DNA of 64,000 nucleotides. Source: Fimbriosthenelais zetlandica (lineage: Eukaryota). This document shows, one piece after another, positions 15,636 through 59,814 of the stretch (position 1 is the first letter of the stretch; each line of letters starts with the position of its first letter). Position numbers and translations under genes: made by a program. The notes under the pieces were generated by a model that was not told where the DNA came from, did not search any database, and saw only the letters and a program-made list of their open reading frames with translations. The stretch lies in the NCBI GenBank assembly GCA_977030845.1, contig OZ365118.1, positions 22,940,001 through 23,004,000 of the forward strand. Direction: 5' to 3'.

Positions 15636-15648
15636 CCACCAGAGGGCG
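15636..15648 (+). promoter_or_regulatory. CTCF core motif (exact)
   Basis: CCACCAGAGGGCG matches CCRSYAGRKGGCR; immediately followed by a partial second site, CCATAGATGGCA. Confidence 0.6.
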
Positions 15649-16660
15649 CCATAGATGGCATACTTAGATATAATACACATCATATATATGTAAACTACTT
15701 TATCTATTGGATAAATATGTCAATTTCGTGCTAATATATTCACCTGTTCAAAGCTAATGTTTCTAAAACATTCAATAAAACTTTTAAGATAAATATCACA
15801 AATCATTCAATATTCTACACAAATAGGCCCACCCACGTCTCTATATGCCCCGTGCGGGATTCAGCTCCCCTCACTATAGCTACCTTAAAGCCACCTTGCT
15901 GGAATATGCAATTGCATTTCATTTCATGGCGATATTGATATTACATCGGGTATAAGGGAATCAATTCATCTCACTTAGGTAAGTGCTAGGCCTCTTTTGT
16001 AATTAAGAAATATGTGTTTGAATGACTTGGAATGAAGACAATAAAAGAAAGTCGGGTGCATCGTGTAATTGGATTTCACCGACAGTCGGACAGTGATGGG
16101 GGTGGGGGGGGGGGGGGGGTAGGGGGGGGGGTGAATGATTGATGATAATGATGTATAGACAAATAGCTGACGTCAATATGAGAAATTTACATCCTATAGC
16201 TATAGTGTAGGCTCCACCCACCTTCCTACTTCAAGATCTCCACCCTATCTCAACCCACAGTACAAACCCCCACCCATGCCTCTACCAATAGGCCTCCCCA
16301 CCCCCTGCCCCCTCAGGCCTGTATGTTTAGGTCGAGGCTCATTTGTAATTAGATTTACAGAATCTATAGCCGTCACGTGATATGACCATCTATAGGTGTA
16401 AGATCACTAATCAGTAATCACTATTATCACTATAACATGATTCTCTATTATCATTATAACATTACATATAAAAGATGAACTTTTCTCCAGTATAATAAAT
16501 AAAGCTTTCTCCAGAGAGTAACCATTACACTTATCAATCACTAGTGTAGTTTGAATTGGCATCACAGGTATGTATATAAACACAAACAGGTATATAAACA
16601 CAAACACATCTCAATGAGAATATGTCAGTGAGAGAGCGACTTGCTTCATCACTTTGGTCT

Positions 16661-16909
16661 TGTTTACATTTGTTTACATTTGTTTAAACATCTTAAACTA
16701 AACCCGCTGCGTATATAGAATACCACAGAATACCAAACCTGGTTCATAAGACATTTAGGAACATTTGTACACAATTTGAGTTAAATGCGGTGACGAGATA
16801 ACAACCGGGAGAGCGAAAACAAACCAAGCGGGCACAGAAGCTGGCCACAGCATCGACCAACGGCCGCCATTTTGTTTTACCTGCGACTCCACGTGGAAAG
16901 TAAACAAAC
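16661..16909. promoter_or_regulatory. Forkhead / YY1 / E-box cluster
   Basis: TGTTTAC x2 plus TGTTTAA at a 10-bp period (16661-16690), GCCGCCATTTTG (16863-16874), CACGTG (16890-16895) and GTAAACAAA (16900-16908). Confidence 0.3.
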
Positions 16910-17074
16910 GGTTGCTAAGACAAATATAACGAGCTAAGACAGATATCTCCGGGTCGACCGGATAGCCTGGGTCATATTGAGGTGAAACACTACTCACTTT
17001 TGGAATGTCACGGTAGATAACGTGGTATAAAACGCCTTTTTCTGCTACCCGTCTCCTCCTCCTCCTCCTCTCAC

Positions 17075-17136
17075 CTGAAGCGGCCATTGCTCAGCAGGGA
17101 GCATTTAGTTTACACGCTTCCCGTGAGAGGCGCGCC
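17075..17136 (-). other. Candidate first exon, copy 2: GCA ATG GCC GCT TCA G|GTGAGA (MAAS, phase 1)
   Basis: ATG at 17087 and donor GTGAGA at 17074-17069; paralogous to copy 1, 184 bp away. Confidence 0.4.
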
Positions 17137-17258
17137 GGTGAGAGGGAGGCAGGGAGGGAGAGAGGCAGGGAGGGAGAGAGGGAGGCAGGGAGAGGGATAG
17201 AGATAAAGAGTGAGACAGGAGAGAGATAGAGAGGATTTAGAGAGAATAGAGGACTTAC

Positions 17259-17342
17259 CTCGTGCAGCCATGGCTGAGCGGGGAACATTTTAGTGTTTAG
17301 CGGGGAGCATTTAGTTCACACGCTTTCCGTGAGGGGCGCGGC
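17259..17342 (-). other. Candidate first exon, copy 1: GCC ATG GCT GCA CGA G|GTAAGT (MAAR, phase 1)
   Basis: Good-context ATG at 17271 and consensus donor GTAAGT at 17258-17253. The 5' part is homologous to copy 2 and runs into the gap. Confidence 0.45.
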
Positions 17343-17470
17343 NNNNNNNNNNNNNNNNNNNNNNNNNNNNNNNNNNNNNNNNNNNNNNNNNNNNNNNNNN
17401 NNNNNNNNNNNNNNNNNNNNNNNNNNNNNNNNNNNNNNNNNNNNNNNNNNNNNNNNNNNNNNNNNNNNNN
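17343..17470. other. Assembly gap (128 N)
   Basis: Run of n bases. Confidence 1.
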
Positions 17471-17852
17471 GAGTGAATGTCTATAACTTCTCTATCCCGT
17501 CTTTTTACATCTCTAGCTCACTGTAAGGTGGCGCTGTGTAACACCCGGGAGAGATGTATGTCAGGGAGAGGTTAAAGGTCACGGTCTGACCTATTCATAT
17601 CCATTTCGAGGCTGTCGCCGTGCAGATGACATGGTCATCTTTACCGTTTAGCCCTGGCGTGGCCTGACCATCCCACATCATTCATACCCACCATTACCCC
17701 ATATACAGCGGGCATTGAATATAAAACCATATTACTCTCCTGCCCTGTCCCCACTTGCTGCCTCCCCCGGCTCCCCCATCCCCCCCCCCCCACCACACAG
17801 TGAGACGATCATTAAGTATAGGGGGCGGTGTAATTAATCGAGTTTGACCTTC

Positions 17853-17865
17853 TCACCAGGGGGCG
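17853..17865 (+). promoter_or_regulatory. CTCF-like motif (1 mismatch)
   Basis: TCACCAGGGGGCG. Confidence 0.45.
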
Positions 17866-18796
17866 GTAGAATAGGAAGCTAACATAATGGTGTGGAGCGG
17901 GCGGCAGTGAGAGTGAAGGTGATATTGTCCAGCACCGCGCCCCGCCACATTCATATCAACCGAGAATTGATATGAATGCTGAACCACTTCATGAATAATA
18001 GACGCCATGTCAGGACGAGCATTCTACAGGAAAGGCAATCTATTTGTCTGGGTAAAGGTGCGGTAAGGAGACGGGGGGGGGGGGGGGCTGGGCTGGAGAC
18101 GGGGGGGGGGGGGGGGGGTGGAGACGGGGGGCTGGAGCGGAAGACCCAGCTCTGAGACGCTCTGTCAGAACTCACCGCTTTGTAAAATATTCATTAATTT
18201 AGATTTATATCCACCAGAGGGTCATCTTGACCAGTGATGATTGATATAGGAGGGTCAAGATATAGAGGGGGCGGGGGGGGGGGGGGGGGTGAGGTACAGA
18301 GGGGACCTAATGCCCAGGCGGTATATAGTATTTATAGCAATACGACTATATCCCTGATGTCTCCTTATATAGTATAACATACACATCATATAGACATGAA
18401 GTAAACCTCAAAGCTGCCGTGTATAGGCCTGGGTATAGGCCCGTATATAGGCCTACAATGATGTGCAGTCTCACATCCATGTCAGGGACACACTAGGCCA
18501 GCCTCATACAAGGCGCTCTAAGCTCACAAACTGCACGTAAATTATCCACAAATAACGGCTGTCTGCCATTTTTAATTTCACTAGAACCTTTGTCTTCAAA
18601 AGAAGGCAGCGCTAAAAGACTATTTTAGACTTGAAGGACGTGGAGAAGCAAAGCATCTCAAGGCCGGCGTGTTGAGGAATCTCAGAGGTCAAAGAGAGGA
18701 CATTCCATGGCCGCCATCTTGTTATACACAGGATGGTCGCTAGGTGGCCACGTGATGAGCCTCGATCTCATAGCGAGGCTGACCCTGTCACTGAGC

Positions 18797-19155
18797 AGAC
18801 GGCCGGTAGAGGGAGAGGGCAGTGTTAAGTAGATGGCCGGTAGAGGGAGAGGGCAGTGTTAGTAGGCCTAGATGGCCGGTAGAGGGAGAGGGCAGTGTTA
18901 GTAGATGGCCGGTAGAGGGAGAGGGCAGTGTTAAGTAGATGGCCGGTAGAGGGAGAGGGCAGTGTTAGTAGGCCTAGATGGCCGGTAGAGGGAGAGGGCA
19001 GTGTTAGTAGATGGCCGGTAGAGGGAGAGGGCAGTGTTAGTAGATGGCCGGTAGAGGGAGAGGGCAGTGTTAGTAGATGGCCGGTAGAGGGCAGTGTTAG
19101 TAGATGGCCGGTAGAGGGCAGTGTTAGTAGATGGCCGGTAGAGGGCAGTGTCAGT
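18797..19155 (+). repeat. Minisatellite, 11 units (eight of 33-39 bp, three of 27 bp), carrying CTCF-like and YY1-core motifs
   Basis: Unit AGATGGCCGGTAGAGGG(AGAGGG)CAGTGTTAGT. Units 1-3 are duplicated as units 4-6 (106-bp block). The 27-bp units contain exact cores CCGGTAGAGGGCA at 19081, 19108 and 19135. Confidence 0.95.
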
Positions 19156-19234
19156 AGTGTAGCATCACGCCGTCTGATGGCGCCACCACCAGACCACAAT
19201 AGTGATGAATTAGGACAGCCCTCCACGACAAACA

Positions 19235-19247
19235 CGCCCCCTGGTGG
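19235..19247 (-). promoter_or_regulatory. CTCF core motif (exact, canonical)
   Basis: Minus strand CCACCAGGGGGCG, facing the plus-oriented array. Confidence 0.6.
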
Positions 19248-21199
19248 TGAGAAAAAGGTGCGAATGGCACAACAATAAGGAAGTTGGTTGGAAAAGGGCT
19301 GGCGATAAGGACAGGCGATTATGATGGAGGAGAAGGTGGGGAGAAGGTGGAGTAAGGAAGATGGATAGAGAGAGACCATCCCCCACCCCCCACCCCCACC
19401 ATGTCAGCTCCCCCCACATGATAATTACGGCAGGTATAAATATGACCCGCCTCATGATGACAGAGACAGAGCATGATTGCCACTCACACACTTTGTAAAA
19501 TGTATCGATAAAGGAAACCACTGTAACATTCTTTATTCCGACTCCTTCAACCACCGCCTTCATTAATACCTAATTAAATGACATCCATCTTTATATTGAT
19601 CATCTCCTATTGCTGGTTTTTAACTCCGTCAAAGTTTGAGTTGTGGCGGAGGGAATGTTGATGGAGGATTAAAAACAAAGAGATGTTGTGAGAGGTAAAC
19701 TAACATGGAACATGGGGCGGTCGATGTGTGACTGGGGGAGGTGAGGGGGAGGTGAGAGGGAGGGGGGGGGGGGGGGGAGAGGGAGGGGGAGAGGGAGAGG
19801 GAGAGAAGGTGAGGATGGAGGCAGGATGAAGACCCTCCACACCACTTGCTTCCATTGATCTTTCTCGGTCATGGAGGACTGTGAAAGCTGGGAGTGTCCA
19901 ATCAATAGAAGCACAATATCATGGCCCACACTTCCTCTCACAATATCATGGCCCACACTTCCTCCTTGGCCCACCTGTTCATGGTAAGATTCACCAGTGC
20001 TGAAGATGGCCACCAATCATTCAGCTTCACAACAGAAAGTGTGATGCGGAATAATGGAATTAAAGTCACCAATAAAACTGTCATAATATGGGGTGAGGGT
20101 GAGGGGGTAGTGGATGGGGGGCCAGGGGGCAGGGGCAGGGGGTGAGGGGTTGGGGTGAGAGTGTCTTGGATGAGTCACTGCTGAGACCAAAGTGGAAATG
20201 GGCGTGAATCTCCTGACTAGATTAGGAAATAATCATCATTGAATTATCATAAATTCGATTTGGAGTTGCACAAATTCACAGATTCTCAGATGAAGTGTTT
20301 TGCTAGGAGACTAAACTATTTACCAATGACTGTGATGACAGCTGAAGCCTCCTGATACCATCAAATTCCTGACAAACCCCAAACCCCCAGATTCCTGCCT
20401 TACACACCCAAATCACCAACCCAAATCACAAATCAAAGCTGTCATATGTAGGTTATAGCTGATGTAGCCTGACAGACTACATGCAGGCTGCTGTGATATT
20501 TTTTGAACCACATTTCCCTACAAGGCAATACTTTTTATTAGCCATGTAAGATGTGAGATGAAGAGAGAGTACCTTCCCCCCTGTCTCTCCCTCTCCTCCT
20601 CCCTCCACACCTAAATAAACCTCCCCCGAGCCTGCTAGCTGAGGAGAAACAAGTAGGTAAACACTTGACCACCTCTCACACGCCACTACCTCCACTTCCC
20701 TCTCTCTCATTTTTACATAAGGCAGACACTCTTATTTACAAACCTGCGGCCCCCAACACTCCACCAAAACCTCTCCTCACATTCTGCGCCACACCATCCA
20801 CCTACCGCCAAGCCCTACTGTAAACACTAGAACCAGCCATGGCATCCGCCTGGGAAATTAGGCATTGCCTTATTGGTTTTCCACTGAGATCATTAGAATA
20901 GTGAATCTTAGTGGTAAGCCATTCATTGACATGGCCATGCTTGGTGTGGGTGCTGGTAAGGCAGCGTGTATTGTGATTGAGGTCCGGGGATCACCTGTGA
21001 CGGACCCAGCTACTGTACACTGCCCTATAATAATAAAATGACCTTATACCGTCCTCCCGGGAGATGGTCAAACTGTGGTATGAGAAGGTGGACATGTCGG
21101 GGTCAGTCTTGACCACTAACTGTGGCATTTACCTTTACTATAGCAGCATTGATACCCCAACATCCAAATCACTGACCACACGACCACAGTCAGAAACTA

Positions 21200-21405
21200 T
21201 GTGACAATATACAGACAACTGGTCCTGTAACATTACAGGAGGGTCATGTATTACACAATGAAACAATGTGACAATATACAGACAACTGGTCCTGTAACAT
21301 TACAGGAGGGTCATGTATTACACAATGAAACAATGTGACAATATACAGACAACTGGTCCTGTAACATTACAGGAGGGTCATGTATTACACAATGAAACAA
21401 TGTGA
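21200..21405 (+). repeat. 67-bp tandem repeat x3 (identical)
   Basis: Each unit contains the inverted repeat TCCTGTAA-CA-TTACAGGA. Confidence 0.95.
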
Positions 21406-22402
21406 GAAATACAATACAGGCGATAGATACAGGCAATAAAATAGGGTCCTATATTTCATTTTACAGAACTGACTCTTGTTACCCATACCGTCCTGAATTT
21501 TACATGACCCCCCTGTATTCTCAGCGTACCTGAAACTACTAACAGTCCATCCTTGTTGTGAGACGACCCCTTTTTATCGTGGTTCATATATTTACTCACA
21601 TTGACATATCGGTCAATAGTTATTGTATTATTGTCTCTGTGACCTTTCAGCTCTATAAGAGTTGGTGTTAAATTATTACCAGCTTTGTAGATGAGCCCAC
21701 CAGCCCGGCTGAGCGCCCACCAGCCCGGCTGAGCCGAGAATCTGACTAATTCCAGGCAGGACTACCAACAAATCGAGCAGCTTTTTAAAAACAATCTCGC
21801 GGCTAATAGAGGACGAGGGGGCATACTCAGCCTTTGTGAATAAACCAACTTTTCAAGTCGGATAATGGCGTTGCTATGGTAACGTGGACGCTAGAGGGGG
21901 AATGGTGGGTAGGCTGTGGGGCGGGGGGAGGGGAGTAGGGGGTGGGGGGAGGGCTGGGAAGTGAGTGCATCTGAATAATGTCCTCTTTGATCTGGCCTCT
22001 AACCGGGTGATGCACTCATCAGACTCTCTCTCCATTCTCTTCTCTTTTTATCCAAACTTCAACAGCAAACAAACAAGCTGTGGTCGTCTATAATTCTCTC
22101 CCCATCTCAGCTAAGCTTCTCTCTAAACTATACTCAACACACACACTAGACGACTATTCCCTTCTATTAATGGTTCCTTACGTATTGAAATAATTCCTCT
22201 TTCTATTAATCAAGCATTTTGTTGAACACCAATGTTCAAAGCTAAGGTCAGGTAAACATCCGTGTATGGCCTACCTCACAGTAACGGTGATGTCTACCAT
22301 TTATAACGTTATAAAGTCATTCATACCCACTATTGTCATTGTTCTGGTTTATTATGGGTTCAGGTATCACTCTAGCCCACCTCACCTTTAGTTACCTGTA
22401 CA

Positions 22403-22415
22403 CCGCCAGGTGGCG
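22403..22415 (+). promoter_or_regulatory. CTCF core motif (exact)
   Basis: CCGCCAGGTGGCG(CT). Confidence 0.6.
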
Positions 22416-22879
22416 CTTCATCTCAATGTAAACCATGGTTCATGGCCGGGAATGAAATATAAAGAAATAACTGCCTTTTGATGTGAGGTTTATATATAAA
22501 AGTCAGCTGGAGGTAGGACGAGGAGGAGGTGAGTGTTAGCTCACAATAAAACCTCAACTTTATACATAAAATATACCAGATTAGTTTATATAGAGAGGCG
22601 AGGTGAGAGGTGAGAGGGCAGGTGAGGGAGGAGGGTCATGGGGGAGGATATTTACACCTACCTGGACATGAATAACCTAGTGACAACAGGTGAATAACCC
22701 ACCTATACCTACTATAGACACCCCTGATCCACGGTGGCCAGGTGAAGACAGGGTAAATGGTGAAAGGACCATCTATAAAAGACCTTTATAAAAGGTGAAA
22801 GATGTGCTTCATTTATGATCCAAAGGTCATAAAGGGTGGTTATTTGTATATGTAACATGTACATATAAGGATGAGTGAG

Positions 22880-22913
22880 TGACCCGTGACCTCTGACCTC
22901 TGACCCGTGACCC
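22880..22913 (-). promoter_or_regulatory. Five tandem RGGTCA half-sites in DR1 spacing
   Basis: Minus strand GGGTCA-C-GGGTCA-G-AGGTCA-G-AGGTCA-C-GGGTCA. Confidence 0.4.
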
Positions 22914-24593
22914 GGTGAGGCTGACTGATATGTGAACATCGACCAGGGTGGTACCTTTACACCTGACAGGTGTTATACAGGTGTACTCAGGTGTTAAATA
23001 GGACTTAAATCCAGCTTTAACACGAGTACTGGACAGTGAGTGGACAATGAGGGGGAGACTGACCACCCACGGGTTATAGCCAGCCATGTGTGACCACTCA
23101 TACACTATAGGGGGCGCCACGGGGGGTCAGGGGTTAATATAATTACCACCCAGCCTATAGAACATGAACCTCCAAATAACTCCTCAATGACTCCTAAAAT
23201 AATTAACTCAATCTAATCAATGAGCAGTTTTTCTCCACCAGATGTTCTTTTCACACTTTCGGGAGGATTTTGTTACCGATCCGTGATATTGTACTCGAGC
23301 CATTACAATACATGGCTGTTATTGTCAGACCATTACAATACATGATTGTATCTTGTTGTTCATGTCAGGCCATTTACAATGATCCACGTGTATTAGATTA
23401 ATTACCTTAATGTGCCTTAATTAGCACTCAGTGTGATATTGAACATGAATCACATGAATCAATATGAACCTCACGGACTATATGAGTATTACTGCAATAT
23501 TCACACTCATTCACGATCCAATCTCAAGGAGAATTGGAAAAAGTTTCAGTAAAGTTGAAAGCACTTTAGAGTACAAGAGGATGAAATGAGAAAGTATTCC
23601 CCGGGAAACAAAGAAGCAATTAGCGGGCGAGGGGTGTTGAGGGGTGGTTGGGGAAGTGGGGGGTGGTTGGGGGGATTCCTGGACAATGGTGGGAGATGTA
23701 ATTAACGAGTACATTAATGGTGTGACACTCACAGCTATTAACTGGCCATCTCCCAAACTACCTACCCTCCCCCACCCTACCCTCTCACCACCCCACCCTA
23801 CCCTCTCACCACCCCACCTTACCCACCCCACAACATCCCAGACAAGGGGTGTTCCATTAAAAGTTCCTGCATCATTACCCAGTGCTGTGTGAGAACTTCT
23901 TGACCTTTTTTTAAAAAACACAATCTGAGACCCGGCCTTGTGTAACAGCCTGAGAGAACATGGCAGGCGGCCAGGACTGCCCGGGGGGGGGGGGGGGGGG
24001 ACTGTGACGGGGGGGGGGGGCAGTATGAGTTATACACCTGCCGGGGGTGGGGTCATCTAGCTAGAGACATGCATTGCATGATGCAATCATGCACCTACAT
24101 GCAACCTCAAATGCATCATTCACCTTCCATCTAAGGTGACTTTTGGTCGCTGTCATAATAAATGTAATAGAACCTTATTGTATTGGTATTGTTTCTCTCA
24201 TTTCTCTGGATTCTGAATTCATAAAATGATACCAGATTGAGAGATGATTCTGTGGCAGACAAAGCTGGCTGAGTGCCGTGTGGAGGTCAGGGCCTTCTCA
24301 CGACAACTATACAATAGTTACAACTCACTTAATGAGAGGGCATTATGAGGCGTTTAACTGAGGCGGGGTGGGTGTTTGTTGAGGCGGGGTCGGTGTCTTT
24401 TATCCATTCAGCCTCTGTTATGAGCGACTCTGGAGTCATGTAAGAGCTACTCGTCACCATGGAGGTTGTCATGACATCGTGGAGGTTGTCATGACATCGC
24501 CTCATTGTGTTTGTCGCTACATGATATCTATTGTCCGCGTGAGGCGCGTGGTCGCGTCATCTTCACGACGCATGCGCACCTCGCGCGTCATGC

Positions 24594-24606
24594 TGCCCCC
24601 TGGTGG
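24594..24606 (-). promoter_or_regulatory. CTCF core motif (exact)
   Basis: Minus strand CCACCAGGGGGCA(GC); next to an NRF1-like ACGCATGCGCA (24568-24578). Confidence 0.6.
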
Positions 24607-24615
24607 TAGCGACCC

Positions 24616-24704
24616 CCGCTAGAGGCGCCCTGGTCGCCGCTAGAGGCGCCCTGGTCGCCACTAGAGGCGCCCTGGTCGCCGCTAGAGGCGCCCTGGTCGC
24701 CGCT
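24616..24704 (+). repeat. GC-rich 21-bp minisatellite x4
   Basis: Unit CCRCTAGAGGCGCCCTGGTCG. Confidence 0.95.
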
Positions 24705-26802
24705 GTGAGCACACGGGGTGGGGGAGAGATGCATGAAGTAAAAGACATGCATGGTTTACACCACGAGAACACAGAAATAATTATAACATGACAACTGATA
24801 CCCTGCCAGCGGGCGGCGAGAGGGGAAGGGAGGGGAGAGGGGAGGGGGAAAAGGGGGTATACGGGAGAAGAGAGAAGAGAGAAGAGCGAGGGAAATAGAG
24901 AAGGGAGAAAGAGAGTCGAACAAGTGAAGGAGGAAAAACTCCTACATGAAAAATTCCTTGATGAACCCATCTCAACTTTTTACCATTATATTAAACTGTA
25001 GGCTAAACCTTCACTGAAGATGAGGCCACTTGTAAAGTGCTTCTCTAACAATAGGCCCCCGCTTGTTAACTCACATTCCTTCTTTTCTATTGCCACATTT
25101 TTTTCAAATGTCATCTAAAATCTTCATGAAAGTCGTGGACACGGCACGGGACAATCACCTTTGATTTTCAAAAGTGTCCAAATTCAATTGACATCTTATG
25201 AAGAATGCGATACGGCGTTTAACAGAAGATGAAAAATGTCACAAATCCCCGGATGTTCAGCTGATGAGAACGCGGCGATGAGATGTCCTCAATGACCTTC
25301 AACTCAGAATGAGAACTTATTGAGGACGGTCTCTATCCTCTCTGTGTACAACACTCAGTTACTATACATCAGCAAGAATCAGCCCAAACGACAGTAACTT
25401 AGGTGAACTTCTATATCAGCAATAAGCAACAGAGGTAAAAATCAGCCAGAAGGACTTTATCCTCAGTAGATTTCAATATAAGCTTAGAGTAAAATGTCAT
25501 TTAAGATATGAGCAATAAACTATCTATAAGGTCTGGATGGCAATCGGAACATTGCATGAAAGTAGCCTGTAGTAGAAAGTAGTATAAGTGTTTTTGTTGT
25601 CGATACTTCTGTGTTTCTGACTGGAGTATAATATATAAATGGGTGGTGTGGGCTGTTGGGTGGCATGCCTGGTGGTCAGCAGTCAGTGACCACTGTCCAG
25701 CCTGATGACCATTGATACATGACCGGGCCAGGATCAAACAATGAGCAGGTATAATAACTCATCATGAGCTGCTCTATACGCCTCCTCCATCAACCTTCAT
25801 TAACTCAACTGCTCCTACAGGGTAGACGTGTGAGCTGGGGGTGGGTGGGGGGGGGGGGGGGGTTAGGGGTGAGGTGGGGGTTGGTGGGGTGAGGTGGTGA
25901 GGTGGGGGTTGGGGGGCAGTATCAACCAGGTTTATGATCTAAGCCATCATATAAAAGTCACACTGATTGACTCAGATCAGTTCTGTGATCAGATCTGTGA
26001 TCAGGTCTGTGATCTGGTCTGTGATCTGGTCTGATCAGGACCTGATCCTATAGTGATGGACCGACCACCGCCGACAAAACATGTGATATGTGTGGTCCAC
26101 GAGGTGTATAATGGATAAATACAGCACGTACATGCGATAACTACTACTGTGCTGCTAAATGCTTCAATACTGATGACAACCTGTAGAGATGTAAGCCTGT
26201 GTTAAGATGGTCATTGTAAAAAAACCTGGCTTTGTTAGCCTTGATACCTGACTCTAAAAACTACCCTGAAAAACGCGTGAGAAGGTGAGTGAAGGCGGGG
26301 GGGGGGGGGGGGGGGAGGGGGGGGGGATAAGGTGCACCTCTGTTTTATGACACAACACGCTGAGAATCATGGAGTGATTTCCACGGTGGATTACGAGCCA
26401 GAAGGCACGAGGTAATGTGGCGGACAATAACGGATATTAGTTTACAGTGCGTGCTACCAGGTACAGGGGGCGTGGTGGCCCCACCTGCCCCCACGCCCCG
26501 CCCCGCCCCACACCCCGCCCCGCCCCGCCCCGCCCCCGGGGCTGTACCACACTCAACACCTCTCAGGTGATGTTTAGCCCGGGGCCCCTCCACACATGGA
26601 CAAATTCAGCCATTCCATGCTAGCAATGAAGAGGCTTGTAATTATAGATGATGCCCGCCCAGGTTTATACCCGTCCAGGTGGGGGCATCCTAGGCCTGCA
26701 GACCTTCACTAATCATACAGCTAACATATGGTAATCATATAGGCCTAGCTAACATATGGTAATCTACCAACACAGAGGGGAACTACAGGTGCTCCACTCT
26801 CT

Positions 26803-41200: not shown

Positions 41201-42772
41201 ACAGTAGGCCATCAACACACCCCCACACCAATCTCTACCCTCAAGACATGGAGATTCCCTCTACTTATTTGTCTCAATATTCCCCTGAGTTATTAACTTT
41301 TCCCCTCAATAATCATAACTTTTCTCATGGCGTTATCAAAAACCTCATTGCCATCGTTTTCCCTTGGCTGCCTTTGGTTTTAGTTGAATTAACAAGTCAT
41401 TTGCCTGAATCAAAAGATTTCTTTGCAGCAATGGTGAGTTTTCCATCTGCCGTGTGTAATTTTGGTGGAGTGGGTTTAAAAGGGATCTTAATTAAGGCTA
41501 TCATTAATTAGGGTGTGATTAGTGGGTGGTGGGTGGTGGGTGGGGGGGTGGGGGGGGGGGGGGGTAATATAATGATTATATCGGGGTGGTTGTTAGAGCT
41601 CTGTGTGAGAGATGGCAGGTTTTACCGTGAATTAATACACAGCCCCACATCACAGGCTCTCACAGTCAAATCAATAAGAACAAGTTAAACTTTCCATTCT
41701 CTATTGATTTCCAGCCCTCACTTACCTTTCAAGTGTTAATTCTCAAGGCAGGGATTTGCCATTCATCATATTGGTTTTCTATTCTCAGTCTCAAGTGAGT
41801 TTTTAAACAGTTTCCCCTGAAATGCACTCTCTGCCCCTTTGACTTACATTCACGATTTAAACTCAGGAAATGGCGGCATTCTATAAGAGAGGAGAGGGGT
41901 TTAACGTCATCTGATGTAACTATTTCAGATTAGAACATGGCCTTGGTAGATTAGAACATTAATGAGATAAGATCTAAAGATAAAGAGTTAGTGGAAGCAT
42001 CATGTGGGGCCAGACATGCCAGCTTTCTAACATATCTGCAAATCATCCTTGTACTTAGTTTGTCCCCCATTCACCCAGCTCTCAGTCTATGCTATACCTT
42101 CCGGCCTACCTCCCCATCTCAGCCTATATGCTATACCCCACACCTATCCCAGCCTATGTTATGCCCCCCATGCACCCATCTCAGCCTATGTTTGTGGGTT
42201 CTCCAGGGCAGGAATCTGGCCCACCATGGAGGAGGGAGTGAGCATCAGGAGGTAGGATGAGATGGGTGGGATGAGGAGGAGGGAGGAAGATGATGATTGA
42301 AGCCCTGATTGATCCCATCCACCCTTCATTATTGATCACAGATTGTCAGTTCAACAATTAATCAGGCATGAGAGTCGAGCCGCAGTCATCGATCTCCACC
42401 TGGTACTCATCACTATTTAATGTCCTTCAATTCCCCAGTTATACCTCCACCTTCCCTCCCTCCCAATGGTCAGTTATACCTCCACCTTCCCTCCTCCCGC
42501 TGGTCAAGGGGGGGGGGGTACACTCAGCTGGTCAGCCGGGGGGGGTGGGGGTTTACCCAGCCCACCCATCAAGGCTTGCTGCAGTCAGTTGAACACTGCC
42601 CGGAGCCCGTACTGACCATTCTAACTGACCATTCAAACCAGAGGTGGTCAAGCTGCAAATGACCAGCACAGATAACACGGGTGGTCAGCGCGACGTGTGT
42701 TTCACAGTCAGAGCAGAAACTGAGCAGAAAGTGAGCAGAAACTGAGGGGCAGTAAAACAGGCCTTAAAAACA

Positions 42773-43389: not shown

Positions 43390-44399
43390 CATCTATAGGT
43401 CTCTACTAGACATGGGGAACGTGAAAATAGCTACATTTTATAAATTTCGTTTGAAAAGTAATGGTTTGATGTTTCTTAGACAGGAAATGAAACAGTGAAT
43501 GAAATAAGATGAATAATTAAGTCAATGATTGGCTATGTTGGATTGCCAGCAGGTTGGAGCACACATTTTGTAGCTATATTAGATCAGGTCTCTGAGGGGA
43601 CACGCTGGAATAGATAGTTACAGTGGGGGATTCACGAACCCCAGACCCCCTACATGCTACCAGTCCCCCTACTACATGCAACCAACCCTCCCGGGAATAA
43701 CACAAAAATAACCCACAAAATGAGCTCCCACCAGGAGCGCCACTTCCCATTCTCTTCCTTCTTCCCCTTCCCTTTCATTCTCCCACCTTTCATTCTTCTC
43801 TTTGTATCGCCTAATCCCACATATTTAAATATTAAAACCGGAATACAAATAGCAGAGTTGAATAACACCTTGTGTATCAGTTCTAATATCAAAAGTGCAA
43901 TATCCTAACCTATTGGGGAAAACACGTTGAAAATAATTGAATATTGTCATCAAAATGAGTTGGATGGTCATACAGGAGTAAGAAATGGAATATAAATAAA
44001 CATCTGTGCAAGATTCATTTCATATAAATAAACTGAAGGCAATCAGTTTGTTCAGATCAGGACTACCCATGTCAGAACTTCTAGAGAAGGCTATTTGAAA
44101 ACTAATGATGTTCAGTACTTAAGAATAACCTAGAATAAAATAATGTCTACACAGAAAACATAGTGGAATGACTCAACGACTGAAGGGCTGAAAATGAAGA
44201 TATACCTGGGGTGGTAAAGTCGGTTGCCACATTCAATCTAGAGAAATGTGAACCAATCTGGGCATACATTCTATTCACAGCATTCCTAAAGCAATTATAT
44301 CCAATCTACAAGCCAGTCAGGTTGTCTCCATAACCGTTCCTGGCCAACAAAAGTAGGAAAAAACGAAGATAAATGAAGATTTTAAGAGATGTTGCTTAC

Positions 44400-47108
44400 C
44401 TCTTCTTGTGCTCGTGGCGTTGACGGTTGTAAGGTACTTTTGCCGGCGTTTCCGTTCTCTCCTGCCCCCCCTGACACAGTTCGACTTTTCAAATTGTCCA
44501 TCTCCACGGCCGTGACGTAAGCGTTGGTGGCCTTGACCTTTGACCCCGGCGTTCCGTTGACGTCCTCCATGGGAGGTAGCATTCTCTGAAGCTCTTTTTT
44601 AGAGTTCTCATCGTTGTGTCTTTGTTCAGCGTCTCTACGTTTGATGATGATGATTGTAGCAATGATAATCATAGAGATGATCGCTGTGACGACCACAAAC
44701 ACTATAACAATAATCAGGTTGTCTTTAGACAGGTTCATGGACCGTGACTTGGCGTAACCCGCTACTTTAGTCACGTATATATGTAACTCACCAGGCGCGG
44801 ACAGTAAAGGTTCACCCTGATCCTGGACTATCACCTGGAGGAGGAAGCTATCTCCATCATTCTCCTCTAGTTCTTTATTCACAGATATAGCCCCCGTGCT
44901 GGGGTCAATAGCAAACGCATTGTTACTGTTACCGGTGGTGATCAGGTAGTTGAGGCGGGCGTTCTTACCGGAGTCCGCGTCGTGCGCTCTCAGTTTGGTG
45001 ATCACCTGACCCACCGTCAGTTTATTAGAGATTCTCAGTGAGTTGTTTTTTTGAGTGGGGAAGTCAAACACCGGAGCGTTGTCGTTTTTATCAGCGACGT
45101 AGACGGACACGCTGACGGTGCTGCTCTGACTGTGGTCGTCGTCACTAGACGCTACGACCACCATGTAGTAGACAGGCTTCTCCTCCCTGTCTAACACCTT
45201 CTGTGTAGAGATAGCTCCTGTCTGCGGATCTATCCTGAACATGTCCATGGGGCTGCGGGTGGGATCTAGTGAGTATGAGAAGTGGTTATACGGCTCTGAG
45301 TCTCTGTCCTCAGCCACCACCTGTCCTACCTCAGAGTTAGGCTGCTGGTTCTCAAACGTACCGAACGCATACGTCTCCTGCTGGAACCTGGGAACCTCAT
45401 CATCGATATCTACTATACCGATGAGTACTTTAGCCGTAGTGGAACGCGGGATGGAACCCTGGTCCTTAGCGATGACATGGAACTGTAGCTCAGTGAGATC
45501 TTCATGATCAAACACCACGTTAGCCGTTATACTGCCTGTGTCTTCATCTATCGCCACCAGGCCGCGCGCATCCTCGTCTACCTCGTATTTAATCCGTCCA
45601 TTAGTGTCAATGTCGCTGTCACTAGCCGTGACAGCCACTATAAACTCACCTATGAGGTTATTCTCTATAATAGTCGCGGTATACATGGGCTGGGAGAACT
45701 GGGGGGTATGGTCATTGTCATCCAGGATGGTTACCCGGATGTGGGCGAATGACGTCTGAGGAGGGTCGCCTTTATCACGACATTCTAACGTCAGGTCAAA
45801 GTAAGGCAACCTCTCCCTGTCAAATATAGACGACGTGACGATCTTATACTCAGTCAGGTAGAGTTTCTGTAGGTGGAAGTTGCTGTCACTCAGTGAGCAG
45901 GTGAACTTACCGTTCCTGTCACTGTCCTGGTCTATTATAGAGATATGAGCCACGAATGTGCCGGGCGGGGTGTTCTCTGCTACCTGAGCGTCACCACTTG
46001 TTGTCAGAGTGTTGACAGTGATTTGAGGAGCGTTATCGTTCACATCTTGTACCCTCACTACAACTGTAGACTGGGCAGGTAGAGAGTCAGGCCCGCTGTC
46101 ACGAGCTGTCACTGACAGTAGGTATATAGCTCCCTTCTCATAATCCAGCGGGCTCTGGACTATAATCTCCCCGGTCGTGGAGTCTATGAGGAATAAGTTA
46201 CCGTAGTTTTGTTGTGTGTGACGTGAGAGTTGGTACGTGATCTCACCGTTAGGGCCCGTATCCGGGTCTCTAGCCCTCACCTTGTATATGGTCGTACCTA
46301 CAGCTACGTTCTCCCTCACCGACACCTCATACGTTACGTTCTCAAACACCGGGTCGTTATCATTAGCGTCTAATACTGTAATATCAATAAGAACTGATCC
46401 AGACTTGGCCGGCTCGCCTCCATCCACCGCCAGGATCTTTAACTGGTAGAAGTTTTTCTTTTCTCTGTCTAACTCATCGATGAGCACTAGACGCAGGTCC
46501 GTGGCACCGTCGGCAGTTTCTCTCACTTTTAATTCAAACTTTTTGGAGCCTGACTCTAGGAGGTAGTCCTTGACACTGTTCATGGCGCTGTCTGGATCCA
46601 GCGCGGCCGGGATGCTGAAGCTGGTCCCGGGTAAAGTCGACTCAGAGATCTTATGATTTATACGGCTCTGAGGGAAGTACGGGGCGTTATCATTCACGTC
46701 AAGTATCTCTACAGTTACCTTAATGATCTGAAAGTTCTTCACCGGCCTCACCGCCACATCAAACTTGACTAAACACTCATCTGTCTGTGTACACAGCTTG
46801 TCCCTGTCCAGCCTGTCTGTGGTGGTAATAATCCCTGTGGCTGTCTCTATATCAAAGTACTGTCTGTCTAACTCTGGCTGGGTGAGGAAGCTGAACCGTA
46901 ACTTAGACAGCTCTGATCCGTTATACTTCAGGTTGAGTTTAGCATCTGTGATGATGTTACCTACAAAAGTCCCAGCGATGAGTTCCTCCCTGATCTGACA
47001 CAGGACTGGCTCAATCTGTCTCCGTCTGCGAGCTGCTCGACCAGCCGTGTCTACCAGCAAGAGGAGCAGGAGGTAGCCTAACAAGGCTATACTCTGTGAC
47101 ACTCCCAT
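44400..47108 (-). CDS. Pcdh: Protocadherin (7-EC, delta1-like) large coding exon: signal peptide + EC1-EC7 + TM + proximal cytoplasmic tail (903 codons); gene continues in unidentified downstream exon(s)
   Basis: Lies within the 924-aa ORF 44382-47156, which starts at TTG; the first in-frame ATG is at 47108 (MGVSQSIALLGYLLLLLLVDTAG, hydrophobic leader). Linkers DVNDNAP, DANDNDP, DVNDNAP, DDNDHTP, DIDDEVP and DKNDNAP plus DRE/DYE and DxD motifs define 7 EC repeats. EC1 has the protocadherin-type DRDKLC-x5-C. TM LIIVIVFVVVTAIISMIIIATIIII is at 44643-44717. The donor GAG|GTAAGC is at 44400/44399 (phase 0). The exact ortholog cannot be assigned. Confidence 0.96.
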
Positions 47109-47131
47109 ATTACACTCCCTATACGTCCCAT
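47087..47131 (-). other. uORF2 (14 aa), out of frame and overlapping the main ATG
   Basis: ATG at 47131, 23 nt upstream of the main ATG; MGRIGSVIWECHRV* ends at 47087, inside the CDS. Confidence 0.4.
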
Positions 47132-47136
47132 GTGGG

Positions 47137-47208
47137 TCACCACGCCACCCCGACAACTATACTCCCTGATAGGGCACTAGAGAGCGTCCAAGTCCTCCTC
47201 CAGGGCAT
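47137..47208 (-). other. uORF1 (23 aa) upstream of the protocadherin ATG
   Basis: ATG at 47208 to TGA at 47139-47137 (MPWRRTWTLSSALSGSIVVGVAW*). Relevant only if included in the mRNA. Confidence 0.35.
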
Positions 47209-57775: not shown

Positions 57776-58516
57776 AAACATCGTACATCTCAATGTATCT
57801 CTAACATTCAGCTCACCGACACTTCATCCTTTCTCAATCTCACCCAAAAATAAGATCAAAGAGATTGCCTTCCTACTAAGGCCACTTTAGACCAAGAAGT
57901 GTGTAATATTGGTGTTTTGTGGCGGGTGGTGGGAGGGTTTAGGTGGGTGGTGGGAGGGTTTAGGTGTGTGGGTGAGTGGTTTAGGTGGGTGGGTTTAGGT
58001 GGGTGGGCTACCTGAGCCAGCCTGTGGTGAATGTTTCACATTCTCTGAGTGCCTCAGTCGTGATAAAGTTGGTCGGGTGTCTCCTCCATTATGTCACGTG
58101 TCTACTGACTGTAGCAGATTTACCTACATCTACTGCTACATGGCTACAGACTGGCTACATGGCTACAGGCTGGCTACACGGCTACAGGCTGGCTACATAC
58201 AGTATGGCTACAGGTATGACTACAGTATGGCTGTATTGTAGGCCTATTGATTAAAATATTTAAAAAATGATTAAAATATTATTGCAAATATCTGAGCAAG
58301 TGGAAACAATCAATCTGTGAATGTGGGTTGAATGACTGTTAGGATTCTGTGACTAGATGAGGGTAATGTCAGTGTCTGTGAGCGGGGGGCTGCCTCTCCC
58401 TGCCTCTCCCTGTCTCTCTCTGTCTCATATAATCTTTAACAGCTCCAGTCACCGCCTCTCACGACCATATAACGGCTTTTACCGGCCTTCAAAACGTATA
58501 CGACGGCGTGATAACG

Positions 58517-59365
58517 AGCCCCGCTCAGCCCCGACCAGCCCCGCTCAGCCCCGCTCAGCCCCGACCAGCCCCGACCAGCCCCGCTCAGCCCCGCTCAGCC
58601 CCGCTCAGCCCCGCTCAGCCCCGACCAGCCCCGACCAGCCCCGCTCAGCCCCGGCCAGCCCCGACCAGCCCCGCTCAGCCCCGCTCAGCCCCGACCAGCC
58701 CCGACCAGCCCCGCTCAGCCCCGACCAGCCCCGACCAGCCCCGCTCAGCCCCGGCCAGCCCCGACCAGCCCCGCTCAGCCCCGCTCAGCCCCGACCAGCC
58801 CCGACCAGCCCCGACCAGCCCCGCTCAGCCCCGACCAGCCCCGACCAGCCCCGACCAGCCCCGACCAGCCCCGCTCAGCCCCGACCAGCCCCGACCAGCC
58901 CCGCTCAGCCCCGGCCAGCCCCGCTCAGCCCCGCTCAGCCCCGACCAGCCCCGACCAGCCCCGACCAGCCCCGCTCAGCCCCGACCAGCCCCGACCAGCC
59001 CCGCTCAGCCCCGGCCAGTCCCGACCAGCCCCGCTCAGCCCCGGCCAGCCCCGACCAGCCCCGCTCAGCCCCGCTCAGCCCCGACCAGCCCCGACCAGCC
59101 CCGACCAGCCCCGACCAGCCCCGACCAGCCCCGACCAGCCCCGACCAGCCCCGCTCAGCCCCGCTCAGCCCCGGCCAGCCCCGACCAGCCCCGGCCAGCC
59201 CCGACCAGCCCCGCTCAGCCCCGGCCAGCCCCGACCAGCCCCGACCAGCCCCGACCAGCCCCGACCAGCCCCGACCAGCCCCGACCAGCCCCGGCCAGCC
59301 CCGACCAGCCCCGCTCAGCCCCGCTCAGCCCCGACCAGCCCCGCTCAGTCCCGCTCAGCCCCGGC
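58517..59365 (+). repeat. 10-bp GC-rich satellite, ~85 units of three interspersed variants
   Basis: CCGAC/CCGCT/CCGGC + CAGCC; explains the 339-aa and 298-aa Pro-rich ORFs. Confidence 0.98.
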
Positions 59366-59814
59366 TCTGTATTTAAACTGATTGAATCCGTGATGTTCAT
59401 CTAGAAGAAGTGAAGAGCGGTAAATATAGTGAGAGCAGGAGAATAGGGCGGAGGATGGCAAGGATGACAGGAGAATGGGGAGCAGCAGGCAGGTGTGTCG
59501 GTTCTCACGGTGCCTCCTCTCATGGTGTTAGAATACCTGCAGTATTCACTACCTGAACATTCACACACATGACAAGACAAAAACAAGGATCACTGCTCCA
59601 CCATTATACAATATCACAATATCCTTCACACAATTCAACTCTTCCCTGCTCTGCTGGCAACTATTTTCGTAAAATTAATAATTCGGTGAATAGATTCCAC
59701 TTTCAGACAACTAAAATTAACTTGGCAGTGACATGGAACCTGCTTCAAAACCACCATTAGCAATGTTAAGTCTATGGGGAATATTTGGACTGAAACGGGC
59801 CCATGGATTGTTGA

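What the first reader, a model, noticed from the sequence alone, without database searches (positions are those of the whole stretch)
15636..24606. Dense CTCF-site domain downstream of a protocadherin exon (putative boundary or loop-anchor hub)
Seven exact matches to CCRSYAGRKGGCR fall in 9 kb: 15636+, 19081+, 19108+, 19135+, 19235-, 22403+ and 24594-. That is five independent sites if the repeat counts once, and I saw no exact match in the other 55 kb. With equal base frequencies only ~0.12 are expected in the whole window (64/4^13 x 128,000). Near-matches occur at 1353-, 12095+, 12160-, 17853+, 18211+, 18737+, 29170+ and 38930+. CTCF/cohesin control of promoter choice is established for vertebrate clustered Pcdh genes; a comparable architecture at an invertebrate Pcdh locus is inference. 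The block also surrounds the duplicated ATG/donor cassettes, so it may insulate Pcdh from a neighbouring gene.
Basis: partly seen in the sequence, partly recalled or inferred. Interest (0 to 1): 0.72.

Follow-up and report, generated by a model that had tools for sequence, protein, structure and literature searches.

The report
Dense cluster of CTCF-type sites
A 9-kb stretch of single-copy non-coding DNA in a spiralian animal holds far more binding words for the genome-folding protein CTCF than chance allows, and the animal has that protein, but nothing ties the cluster to the nearby protocadherin gene or shows that it is a domain boundary.

Summary
All seven exact matches to CCRSYAGRKGGCR sit at the stated places and nowhere else in the window. 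Shuffles predict 0.09 matches; local composition predicts 0.02 in 10 kb. Three matches are units of a private minisatellite; four are separate sites. Their flanks found no other copy in the genome.

The genome encodes a canonical 11-finger CTCF. It holds 4,336 matches against 200 for the reversed control and 470-1,400 expected from Markov models. At the genome's own rate, about 0.01 such clusters are expected genome-wide.

The protocadherin link is not supported. The gene is solitary, with its nearest paralogue 1.1 Mb away. Twenty-one paralogue exons with 1.5-kb flanks hold no exact motif.

Boundary or loop-anchor function is untested. Orientation is mixed, no neighbouring gene was found, and no reads or related DNA could be obtained. 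Several sites sit beside promoter-type words, and one lies in a CpG island.

Best reading: real CTCF sites in local regulatory modules. The scan has noted CTCF-type clusters elsewhere in this genome, some of them repeat-borne; these are not. The N gap at 17343-17470 could not be checked, but it touches no site.

The parts
15636..15648 (+). Exact CTCF-type core CCACCAGAGGGCG, followed by CCA. It lies in AT-rich DNA whose flanks found no other copy, and it is the only exact site left of the gap.
17343..17470 (.). Assembly gap (N). Continuity across it was not testable. No motif site adjoins it.
17853..17865 (+). One-mismatch CTCF-type word TCACCAGGGGGCG
18211..18223 (+). Two-mismatch word CCACCAGAGGGTC; the 5' eleven bases are intact
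18710..18755 (.). Promoter-type words just upstream of the minisatellite: a YY1-type GCCGCCATCTT, a two-mismatch CTCF-like word at 18737, and a CACGTGA E-box at 18749
18797..19157 (+). Private minisatellite of about 11 units. Eight units of 33-39 bp miss the motif by one base; three 27-bp units match exactly as CCGGTAGAGGGCA at 19081, 19108 and 19135. The flank search found no other copy in the genome.
19235..19247 (-). Exact core CCACCAGGGGGCG, facing the minisatellite 88 bp away. This is one of about 9 non-repeat convergent close pairs in the whole genome.
22403..22415 (+). Exact core CCGCCAGGTGGCG, followed by CTT; flanks found no other copy
24594..24606 (-). Exact core CCACCAGGGGGCA; flanks found no other copy. 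It lies inside a CpG island, 13 bp from an NRF1-like GCGCATGCG word at 24569-24577.
24401..24800 (.). CpG island (GC 0.56, CpG observed/expected 1.0, against a regional median of 0.41). It is the only one inside the block.
24616..24704 (+). A 21-bp repeat in 4.2 copies (CCGCTAGAGGCGCCCTGGTCG). Each unit reads as a degenerate CTCF-like word on both strands; none matches the pattern with one mismatch or fewer.
16531..17111 (+). Segment with a single 93%-identical copy 80 kb away (C37:23037248-23037824). It contains an intact 110-aa ORF on the minus strand with no Pfam match.
44382..47156 (-). Single-exon protocadherin gene (924 aa, six cadherin repeats). The block lies 19.8-28.7 kb downstream of its stop codon. 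No CTCF word lies in or beside it.

Best explanation
The block is a real, non-random cluster of binding sites for the animal's own CTCF. It lies in non-coding DNA that found no other copy in the genome, about 20-29 kb 3' of a solitary protocadherin gene in a gene-poor region near the end of chromosome C37. It holds four separate strong sites, one private minisatellite with three weaker matching units, and three near-sites. Shown: the words are there; neither composition nor the genome-wide rate explains them; the repeat searches I could run found no dispersed family behind them; the genome encodes an 11-finger CTCF; and the motif is over-represented genome-wide. Inferred: CTCF fingers 3-7 read the 13-base core and occupy these sites. 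Also inferred: the sites belong to short regulatory modules of promoter or enhancer type rather than to one oriented loop anchor. Several are flanked by YY1-, E-box-, NRF1- or ETS-type words, and one is in a CpG island. On this reading CTCF acts mainly locally, keeping the elements open or unmethylated and tethering or shielding them. This is the role proposed for the CTCF-like motif in open chromatin of the annelid Dimorphilus. Any barrier effect on cohesin would come from the sum of several sites, not from their orientation.
For: Motif matches and chance. Genome-wide counts are 4,336 matches against 200 for the reversed control and against 470-1,400 from Markov models of order 0-4. The flanks of all four unique sites and of the minisatellite find only themselves in the genome. 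The end words of the dispersed 310-bp CTCF-bearing repeat family are absent from the window. The flanks of the sites are unrelated to one another. The CTCF gene lies at C19:38.509-38.512 Mb in six exon pieces with GT/AG joins and 11 C2H2 fingers. One piece aligns colinearly with residues 310-371 of human CTCF (7w1m_H) at 142.6 bits over two stretches, against at most about 40 bits per stretch for the best generic zinc-finger chain. Promoter-type words beside the sites and the CpG island. Literature: a CTCF-binding motif was the most abundant motif in open chromatin of Dimorphilus gyrociliatus, and the authors proposed that it controls gene expression rather than architecture (PMC10658182). CTCF is ancestral to bilaterians, and a CCCTC-like motif is enriched at squid TAD borders (PMC10658181, PMC9023564).
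Against: There are no occupancy, accessibility, methylation or expression data: no sequencing run was listed. Conservation could not be tested, because the only long contig of a relative has no DNA on offer and the 6-kb contigs of the closest relative do not reach the block. No transcript or exon was found that the proposed promoter-like modules would serve. Three of the seven matches are slippage products of a minisatellite and use the weaker CCGG variant. The region is full of tandem repeats (39 TRF rows in 12 kb). Part of the genome-wide excess comes from satellites and dispersed repeats. The genome DNA search skips very common words, so an old high-copy repeat origin is not fully excluded.
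Confidence: 0.5

Rival explanations
1. One reading: the block is an architectural element, a multi-site domain boundary or loop-anchor hub at which CTCF stalls cohesin and insulates the protocadherin gene's landscape from the DNA beyond it.
For: The site density is of the kind seen at strong vertebrate boundaries. CTCF is present with all 11 fingers. The block lies in a large region without recognisable genes, like a regulatory landscape. The wider 144 kb is also motif-rich, with 4 further exact matches in 135 kb, about 3 times the genome rate. Five of about 9 non-repeat convergent close pairs in the genome lie in the last 0.95 Mb of this chromosome. CTCF-like motifs are enriched at TAD borders in a squid and in echinoderms (PMC9023564, PMC13317027).
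Against: The orientation order (+ + +++ - + -) is mixed and locally convergent, not the divergent pattern of vertebrate boundaries. No gene was found on the far side to be insulated from. No CTCF word lies at the Pcdh promoter to pair with. In echinoderms CTCF motifs show no orientation pattern and are not enriched at loop anchors, and direct evidence for loop extrusion in invertebrates is lacking (PMC13317027, PMC10658181). There are no Hi-C data here.
Confidence: 0.25
2. The cluster has no function. It is a by-product of local sequence turnover in a G-rich, minisatellite-prone subterminal region: slippage, gene conversion, or decayed remnants of motif-bearing repeats.
For: Three of the seven matches are minisatellite units. 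A 21-bp repeat of degenerate CTCF-like words lies next to site 24594. The region has very many tandem repeats. The window lies 0.9 Mb from the end of the contig.
Against: Four sites lie in unrelated flanks that found no other copy. Composition predicts 0.02 matches. The end words of the 310-bp repeat family are absent. Three of the four unique sites keep their CpG-containing GGCG end in a genome whose regional CpG observed/expected is 0.41, which is unexpected for unprotected, methylated DNA.
Confidence: 0.2
3. The block is part of a vertebrate-like protocadherin promoter-choice system, with CTCF/cohesin looping between variable-exon promoters and a distal CTCF-bearing enhancer.
For: The block lies downstream of a Pcdh exon, as the HS5-1 enhancer lies downstream of the mammalian Pcdh-alpha cluster (my own knowledge). 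About 21 paralogues share one chromosome.
Against: There is no tandem array here: one exon in 144 kb, and the nearest paralogue is 1.1 Mb away. Twenty-one paralogue exons with 1.5-kb flanks hold 0 exact motifs, and one-mismatch matches number 8 against 10 for the reversed control. The 6-kb contigs that carry the gene of the closest relative (91% protein identity) hold none either.
Confidence: 0.03

Closest known systems
Clustered CTCF sites at vertebrate TAD boundaries and loop anchors
   Same: Several canonical CTCF core motifs within a few kb of non-coding DNA; the host has an 11-finger CTCF; the motif is over-represented in the genome.
   Different: Orientation is mixed and locally convergent rather than divergent. 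No occupancy, cohesin or Hi-C evidence exists. The host is a spiralian, where loop extrusion by CTCF has not been shown (PMC10658181).
CTCF-like motif in open chromatin of the annelid Dimorphilus gyrociliatus (PMC7854359, reviewed in PMC10658182)
   Same: A spiralian host; the CTCF-type word occurs at candidate regulatory elements; the proposed role is local gene regulation rather than architecture; here the sites sit beside YY1-, E-box-, NRF1- and ETS-type words and in a CpG island.
   Different: That finding rests on ATAC-seq in a compact 74-Mb genome. Here there are no accessibility data, no identified target gene, and an unusual density of sites in one 9-kb block.
CTCF sites of the mammalian clustered protocadherin loci (promoter CSE sites plus the HS5-1 enhancer; PMC7811963)
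   Same: A CTCF-rich element lying some tens of kb downstream of protocadherin coding sequence.
   Different: There is no variable-exon array, no promoter or exonic CTCF word at this gene or at 20 other paralogues, and no evidence of constant exons.
Repeat-borne CTCF motifs (SINE- or TE-carried sites in mammals; tRNA-derived and 310-bp repeat families in this genome)
   Same: The same core word; the minisatellite part of the block is repeat-generated.
   Different: The four strongest sites lie in unrelated flanks that found no other copy, and none of the repeat-family end words occurs in the window.

Membership tests
CTCF binding-site cluster | Sequence matches the CTCF core consensus, in excess over chance | tested here: met
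   7 exact matches against 0.09 by shuffles, 0.02 by local Markov models and 0.087 at the genome rate
CTCF binding-site cluster | The host encodes CTCF with the DNA-reading fingers | tested here: met
   Gene at C19:38.509-38.512 Mb with 11 C2H2 fingers and GT/AG-flanked exon joins. One piece aligns colinearly with human CTCF residues 310-371 at 142.6 bits.
CTCF binding-site cluster | The motif is over-represented genome-wide, so it is in use in this species | tested here: met
   4,336 matches against 200 for the reversed control and 470-1,400 from Markov models. Part of the excess is repeat-borne.
CTCF binding-site cluster | CTCF occupancy in vivo | not testable with these tools
   No sequencing run was listed for this DNA
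CTCF binding-site cluster | Sites conserved at syntenic positions in related species | not testable with these tools
   The relative's 82-kb contig has no DNA on offer. The 6-kb contigs of the closest relative end 1.2 kb past the gene. The tool reports no relatives of this genome in its collection.
TAD boundary / insulator | Divergent motif orientation across the boundary (vertebrate type) | tested here: not met
   The order is + + +++ - + -. Orientation patterns are also absent at echinoderm boundaries (PMC13317027), so this weakens only the vertebrate-type claim.
TAD boundary / insulator | Separates two differently regulated genes or landscapes | tested here: inconclusive
   Pcdh is the only ORF with a Pfam domain among those scanned between -40 kb and +104 kb. 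Genes with short exons would be missed.
TAD boundary / insulator | Drop in contact frequency across the element, with cohesin accumulation | not testable with these tools
   No Hi-C or ChIP data were reachable
Vertebrate-type clustered protocadherin regulation | Tandem array of variable exons | tested here: not met
   One Pcdh exon in 144 kb. The 21 paralogues are spread over 1.2-23 Mb of C37, and the nearest is 1.1 Mb away.
Vertebrate-type clustered protocadherin regulation | A CTCF site in each promoter and variable exon | tested here: not met
   0 exact matches in 115.7 kb covering 21 exons with 1.5-kb flanks; 8 one-mismatch matches against 10 for the control
Repeat- or TE-borne CTCF sites | The site lies inside a dispersed repeat with shared flanks | tested here: not met
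   The flanks find only themselves. The 310-bp family's end words are absent. Only the minisatellite units are repeat-generated, and that array found no other copy.

The most novel reading that the evidence does not exclude
The block is the densest member of a series of paired, inward-facing CTCF modules concentrated in the last megabase of chromosome C37 (pairs at 22.917, 22.959, 23.106, 23.445 and 23.736 Mb). Together they would form a multi-site architectural system in a spiralian. That would be evidence that clustered CTCF anchors organising a gene-poor neural-gene landscape arose before, or independently of, vertebrates.
Probability: 0.12. Interest if true: 0.7.

Novelty: new member of a known kind. 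Interest (0 to 1): 0.35.

Why it matters
Whether CTCF shaped chromosome folding in the bilaterian ancestor, or only in vertebrates, is an open question, and spiralian data are almost absent (PMC10658181, PMC13317027). This block is a concrete test locus: four strong sites whose flanks found no other copy, in an animal with an intact 11-finger CTCF. One ChIP or CUT&Tag experiment and one Micro-C map would show whether such clusters are occupied and whether they insulate. The work also removes a tempting but wrong analogy: protocadherin genes in this genome carry no CTCF words at their promoters or exons.

Tried and rejected
- Sequencing runs: none was listed for the block or for the Pcdh exon. 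So there was no read-based test of the gap, of transcription or of occupancy, and read laying was not used.
The 91% relative's contigs are 6 kb and share only the coding exon (77% DNA identity) and one 111-nt piece. They hold no CTCF word.
I therefore could not fetch 10-kb flanks of the paralogues, random background stretches, or the other paired sites on C37.
- Coding or RNA genes in the block: no ORF of 70 aa or more that was scanned has a Pfam match, and there is no Rfam family and no tRNA.
- Composition as the cause: rejected.
- Dispersed-repeat origin: rejected for the unique sites, within the limits of the searches.
- Pcdh promoter-choice analogy: rejected.
- Naming the species: cluster look-ups returned no names. 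The nearest named Pcdh relatives are annelids, Ridgeia at 46% and Platynereis at 45%.
That was only a lead; the hit was then checked against solved structures.
- The gap was neither filled nor looked up.


Full report
**1. The observation**

The pattern CCRSYAGRKGGCR has exactly seven matches in the window: 15636+, 19081+, 19108+, 19135+, 19235-, 22403+ and 24594-. All lie inside 15636-24606. One hundred dinucleotide-preserving shuffles give a mean of 0.09 and never more than 2. With one mismatch allowed there are 25 matches against 3.5 expected.

The two at 18211 and 18737 have two.

The block is G-rich and full of tandem repeats. Even so, Markov models of order 0-2 trained only on 15.0-25.5 kb predict 0.013-0.020 matches. 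Composition is not the cause.

The three matches at 19081-19147 are the three 27-bp units of a minisatellite at 18797-19157. Its eight longer units carry a 6-bp insertion that spoils the 3' end of the word.

**2. The gap**

The N run at 17343-17470 touches no site. No sequencing run was listed for the block or for the neighbouring gene, so continuity could not be tested.

A local duplicate of 16531-17111 and 17280-17342 lies 80 kb away. It aligns only up to the left edge of the gap. I did not look further there.

Only site 15636 lies left of the gap. To the right, 6 exact matches (4 independent) remain in 5.5 kb. The conclusion does not depend on the join.

**3. The genome background**

The window is C37:22,940,001-23,004,000 of a 447-Mb assembly. 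C37 is 23.84 Mb long, so the window is 0.9 Mb from its end.

Genome-wide the pattern occurs 4,336 times, against 200 for the same pattern read backwards. The backward pattern always contains a CpG, and this genome is CpG-poor: the median observed/expected in this region is 0.41. That control is therefore somewhat too low.

Markov models trained on 307 kb of this genome predict 470-1,400 matches. The excess is thus 3- to 22-fold, depending on the null.

Part of the excess is repeat-borne. The first 100 listed places include satellites and macro-repeats. Exact pairs 5-300 bp apart reveal a dispersed 310-bp family with outward-facing words at both ends and a second family on C25.

At the raw genome rate, 0.087 matches are expected in 8,971 bp. 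P(>=5) is 4e-8, and about 0.01 such clusters are expected genome-wide under uniform placement. Real sites are not uniformly placed, so this is a lower bound on how often such clusters occur.

Non-repeat close pairs are nonetheless very rare: about 9 convergent and about 8 divergent in 447 Mb. This block holds one of them, plus three more exact sites.

**4. The sites are not repeat-borne**

Searches of the whole genome with 300-800 bp around 15636, 22403, 24594 and the minisatellite plus 19235 find only the query itself. The sites' flanks are unrelated to one another. The end words of the 310-bp family are absent from the window even with three mismatches allowed.

One caveat applies. The genome DNA search skips very common words, so an ancient high-copy origin is not strictly excluded.

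**5. The animal has CTCF**

The surrounding 20 kb holds six open exon pieces in order on one strand.

Joined at GT/AG sites, these pieces give 11 C2H2 fingers. One piece aligns colinearly with residues 310-371 of human CTCF (7w1m_H) at 142.6 bits over two stretches. Generic poly-zinc-finger chains reach about 40 bits per stretch.

The reading helices of fingers 3-5 (TSGELVRH, VELSKLKRH, PDTYKLKRH) are, to my recollection, nearly identical to the human ones. Eleven fingers is the ancestral bilaterian number (PMC13317027).

**6. The protocadherin link**

The 924-aa ORF at 44382-47156 (minus strand) is a protocadherin with six cadherin repeats. Its nearest named relatives are annelid proteins at 45-46% identity.

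The genome has about 21 full-length single-exon paralogues. All are on C37, but they are spread over 1.2-23 Mb, and the nearest lies 1.1 Mb away. There is no tandem array here.

No CTCF word with one mismatch or fewer lies in the exon or within 5 kb upstream of it. Across all 21 paralogue exons with 1.5-kb flanks (115.7 kb) there are 0 exact matches, and 8 one-mismatch matches against 10 for the reversed control. The 6-kb contigs of the closest relative, whose protein is 91% identical, hold none either.

The defining features of the vertebrate clustered-Pcdh system are therefore tested and not met. The position 'downstream of a Pcdh exon' is true (19.8-28.7 kb from the stop codon), but it looks incidental.

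**7. What surrounds the sites**

I found no coding exon, Rfam family or tRNA in 9-32 kb. Among the ORFs of 90 aa or more between -40 kb and +104 kb, the longest non-repetitive ones were scanned, and only the Pcdh ORF has a Pfam domain. The region is gene-poor by this crude test, which would miss genes with short exons. No neighbouring gene that might need insulating was identified.

The wider 144 kb is also motif-rich. It holds 4 further exact matches in 135 kb. With one mismatch allowed there are 40 matches against 3 for the reversed control.

Close pairs in the order + then - recur, at -29050/-29024, -23327/-23086, 12095/12160 and 19135/19235. Several of these pairs bracket or adjoin promoter-type words:
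- a CCGGAAGT ETS word and an ATGGCGG word between 12095 and 12160;
- a YY1-type GCCGCCATCTT and a CACGTGA E-box at 18710-18755;
- an NRF1-like GCGCATGCG word at 24569, next to site 24594.

Site 24594 lies in the only CpG island of the block. The palindromic CRE word TGACGTCA occurs at 14 places in the 144 kb. My rough estimate is one or two by chance, so the region may be rich in regulatory elements.

**8. Mechanism**

The best-supported reading is that these are real CTCF sites belonging to short regulatory modules in a gene-poor landscape. The step from word to binding is inferred from the conserved fingers and from the genome-wide excess. The step from binding to function is inferred from the neighbouring words and from the literature.

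In the annelid Dimorphilus, a CTCF-binding motif was the most abundant motif in open chromatin, and the authors proposed gene regulation rather than architecture (PMC10658182, PMC7854359). A boundary or loop-anchor role remains possible, but the sequence gives it no specific support. Orientation is mixed, and no partner site lies at the Pcdh promoter.

In the invertebrates studied so far, CTCF motifs at domain borders show no orientation rule and are not enriched at loop anchors (PMC13317027). Evidence in spiralians is limited to a CCCTC-like motif at squid TAD borders (PMC9023564, PMC10658181).

A neutral origin through local repeat turnover explains the minisatellite matches and the degenerate 21-bp repeat at 24616-24704. 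It does not explain four unrelated sites, three of which keep a CpG in a CpG-depleted genome.

**9. Novelty and verdict**

This is a new candidate member of a known kind: a cluster of CTCF sites. It is statistically solid, but its function is unproven. The scan has flagged CTCF-type motifs at several other places in this genome. One follow-up (s1-189678) found them carried by a tRNA-derived repeat; the sites here are not repeat-borne.

The most novel reading still open is a regional one. Five of about nine non-repeat convergent pairs in the genome lie in the last 0.95 Mb of C37. That hints at a regional CTCF-rich architecture.

Noticed in passing
G000:C37:22,916,673-23,735,730 (window -23327 and beyond the window): Five of about 9 non-repeat convergent exact CTCF-word pairs (5-300 bp apart) in the whole 447-Mb genome lie in the last 0.95 Mb of chromosome C37: 22,916,673; 22,959,081-247 (this block); 23,105,915; 23,445,495; 23,735,518. 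Some of the spacers hold CCAAT-, YY1- or E-box-type words.
   Followed up: partly
many contigs, e.g. G000:C1:15954464-15954774, C37:8669785-8670104, C38:2976456-2976766: A dispersed repeat family of about 310 bp whose two ends carry outward-facing CCACCAGGGGGCG words; it accounts for most divergent exact pairs. A second family on C25 (24.8-27.9 Mb) carries an inward-facing pair about 165 bp apart.
   Followed up: partly
G000:C19:38,509,377-38,511,932 (L014:9178-9846 and L015:57-1833): The animal's CTCF gene: at least six exons on the + strand, 11 C2H2 fingers, and finger 3-5 reading helices that look nearly identical to human CTCF.
   Followed up: yes
G000:C37, 1.2-23 Mb (L024-L044): About 21 full-length single-exon protocadherin paralogues (35-47% identical to the window's), all on one chromosome but dispersed, typically 0.1-1.5 Mb apart, rather than in a tight tandem cluster.
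   Followed up: partly
window 16531-17111 and 17280-17342; copy at G000:C37:23037248-23038005: A local duplication 80 kb apart (93% identity). Both copies keep an intact 110-aa minus-strand ORF (8 differences in 336 bp, none a stop) with no Pfam match.
   Followed up: partly
window 58357-59404: A 1-kb block of up to 81% GC that is a tandem repeat. It reads as open frames in several phases (proline/alanine-rich APLSPAQPR-type units) with no Pfam match. It is probably a GC-rich minisatellite rather than a gene.
   Followed up: partly
window 42285-42394: A 111-nt non-coding piece 2 kb downstream of the Pcdh stop codon is 78% identical to the contig of the closest relative (91% protein identity), where nothing but the coding exon aligns. 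It may be a conserved 3'UTR or regulatory element.
   Followed up: no
144 kb around the window (window -40000 to 104000): The palindromic CRE word TGACGTCA occurs at 14 places, and TCACGTGA E-boxes at several more, in a CpG-depleted region (median CpG observed/expected 0.41). This may mark a dense regulatory landscape around a neural adhesion gene.
   Followed up: no
G000:C1:1,217,876-1,354,706 and 1,424,531-1,747,507: Two macro-repeats carry CTCF words. One word recurs every 17 kb or so (9 copies). A triplet of CCGCCAGGGGGCG within 1.7 kb recurs at intervals of about 27-100 kb.
   Followed up: no
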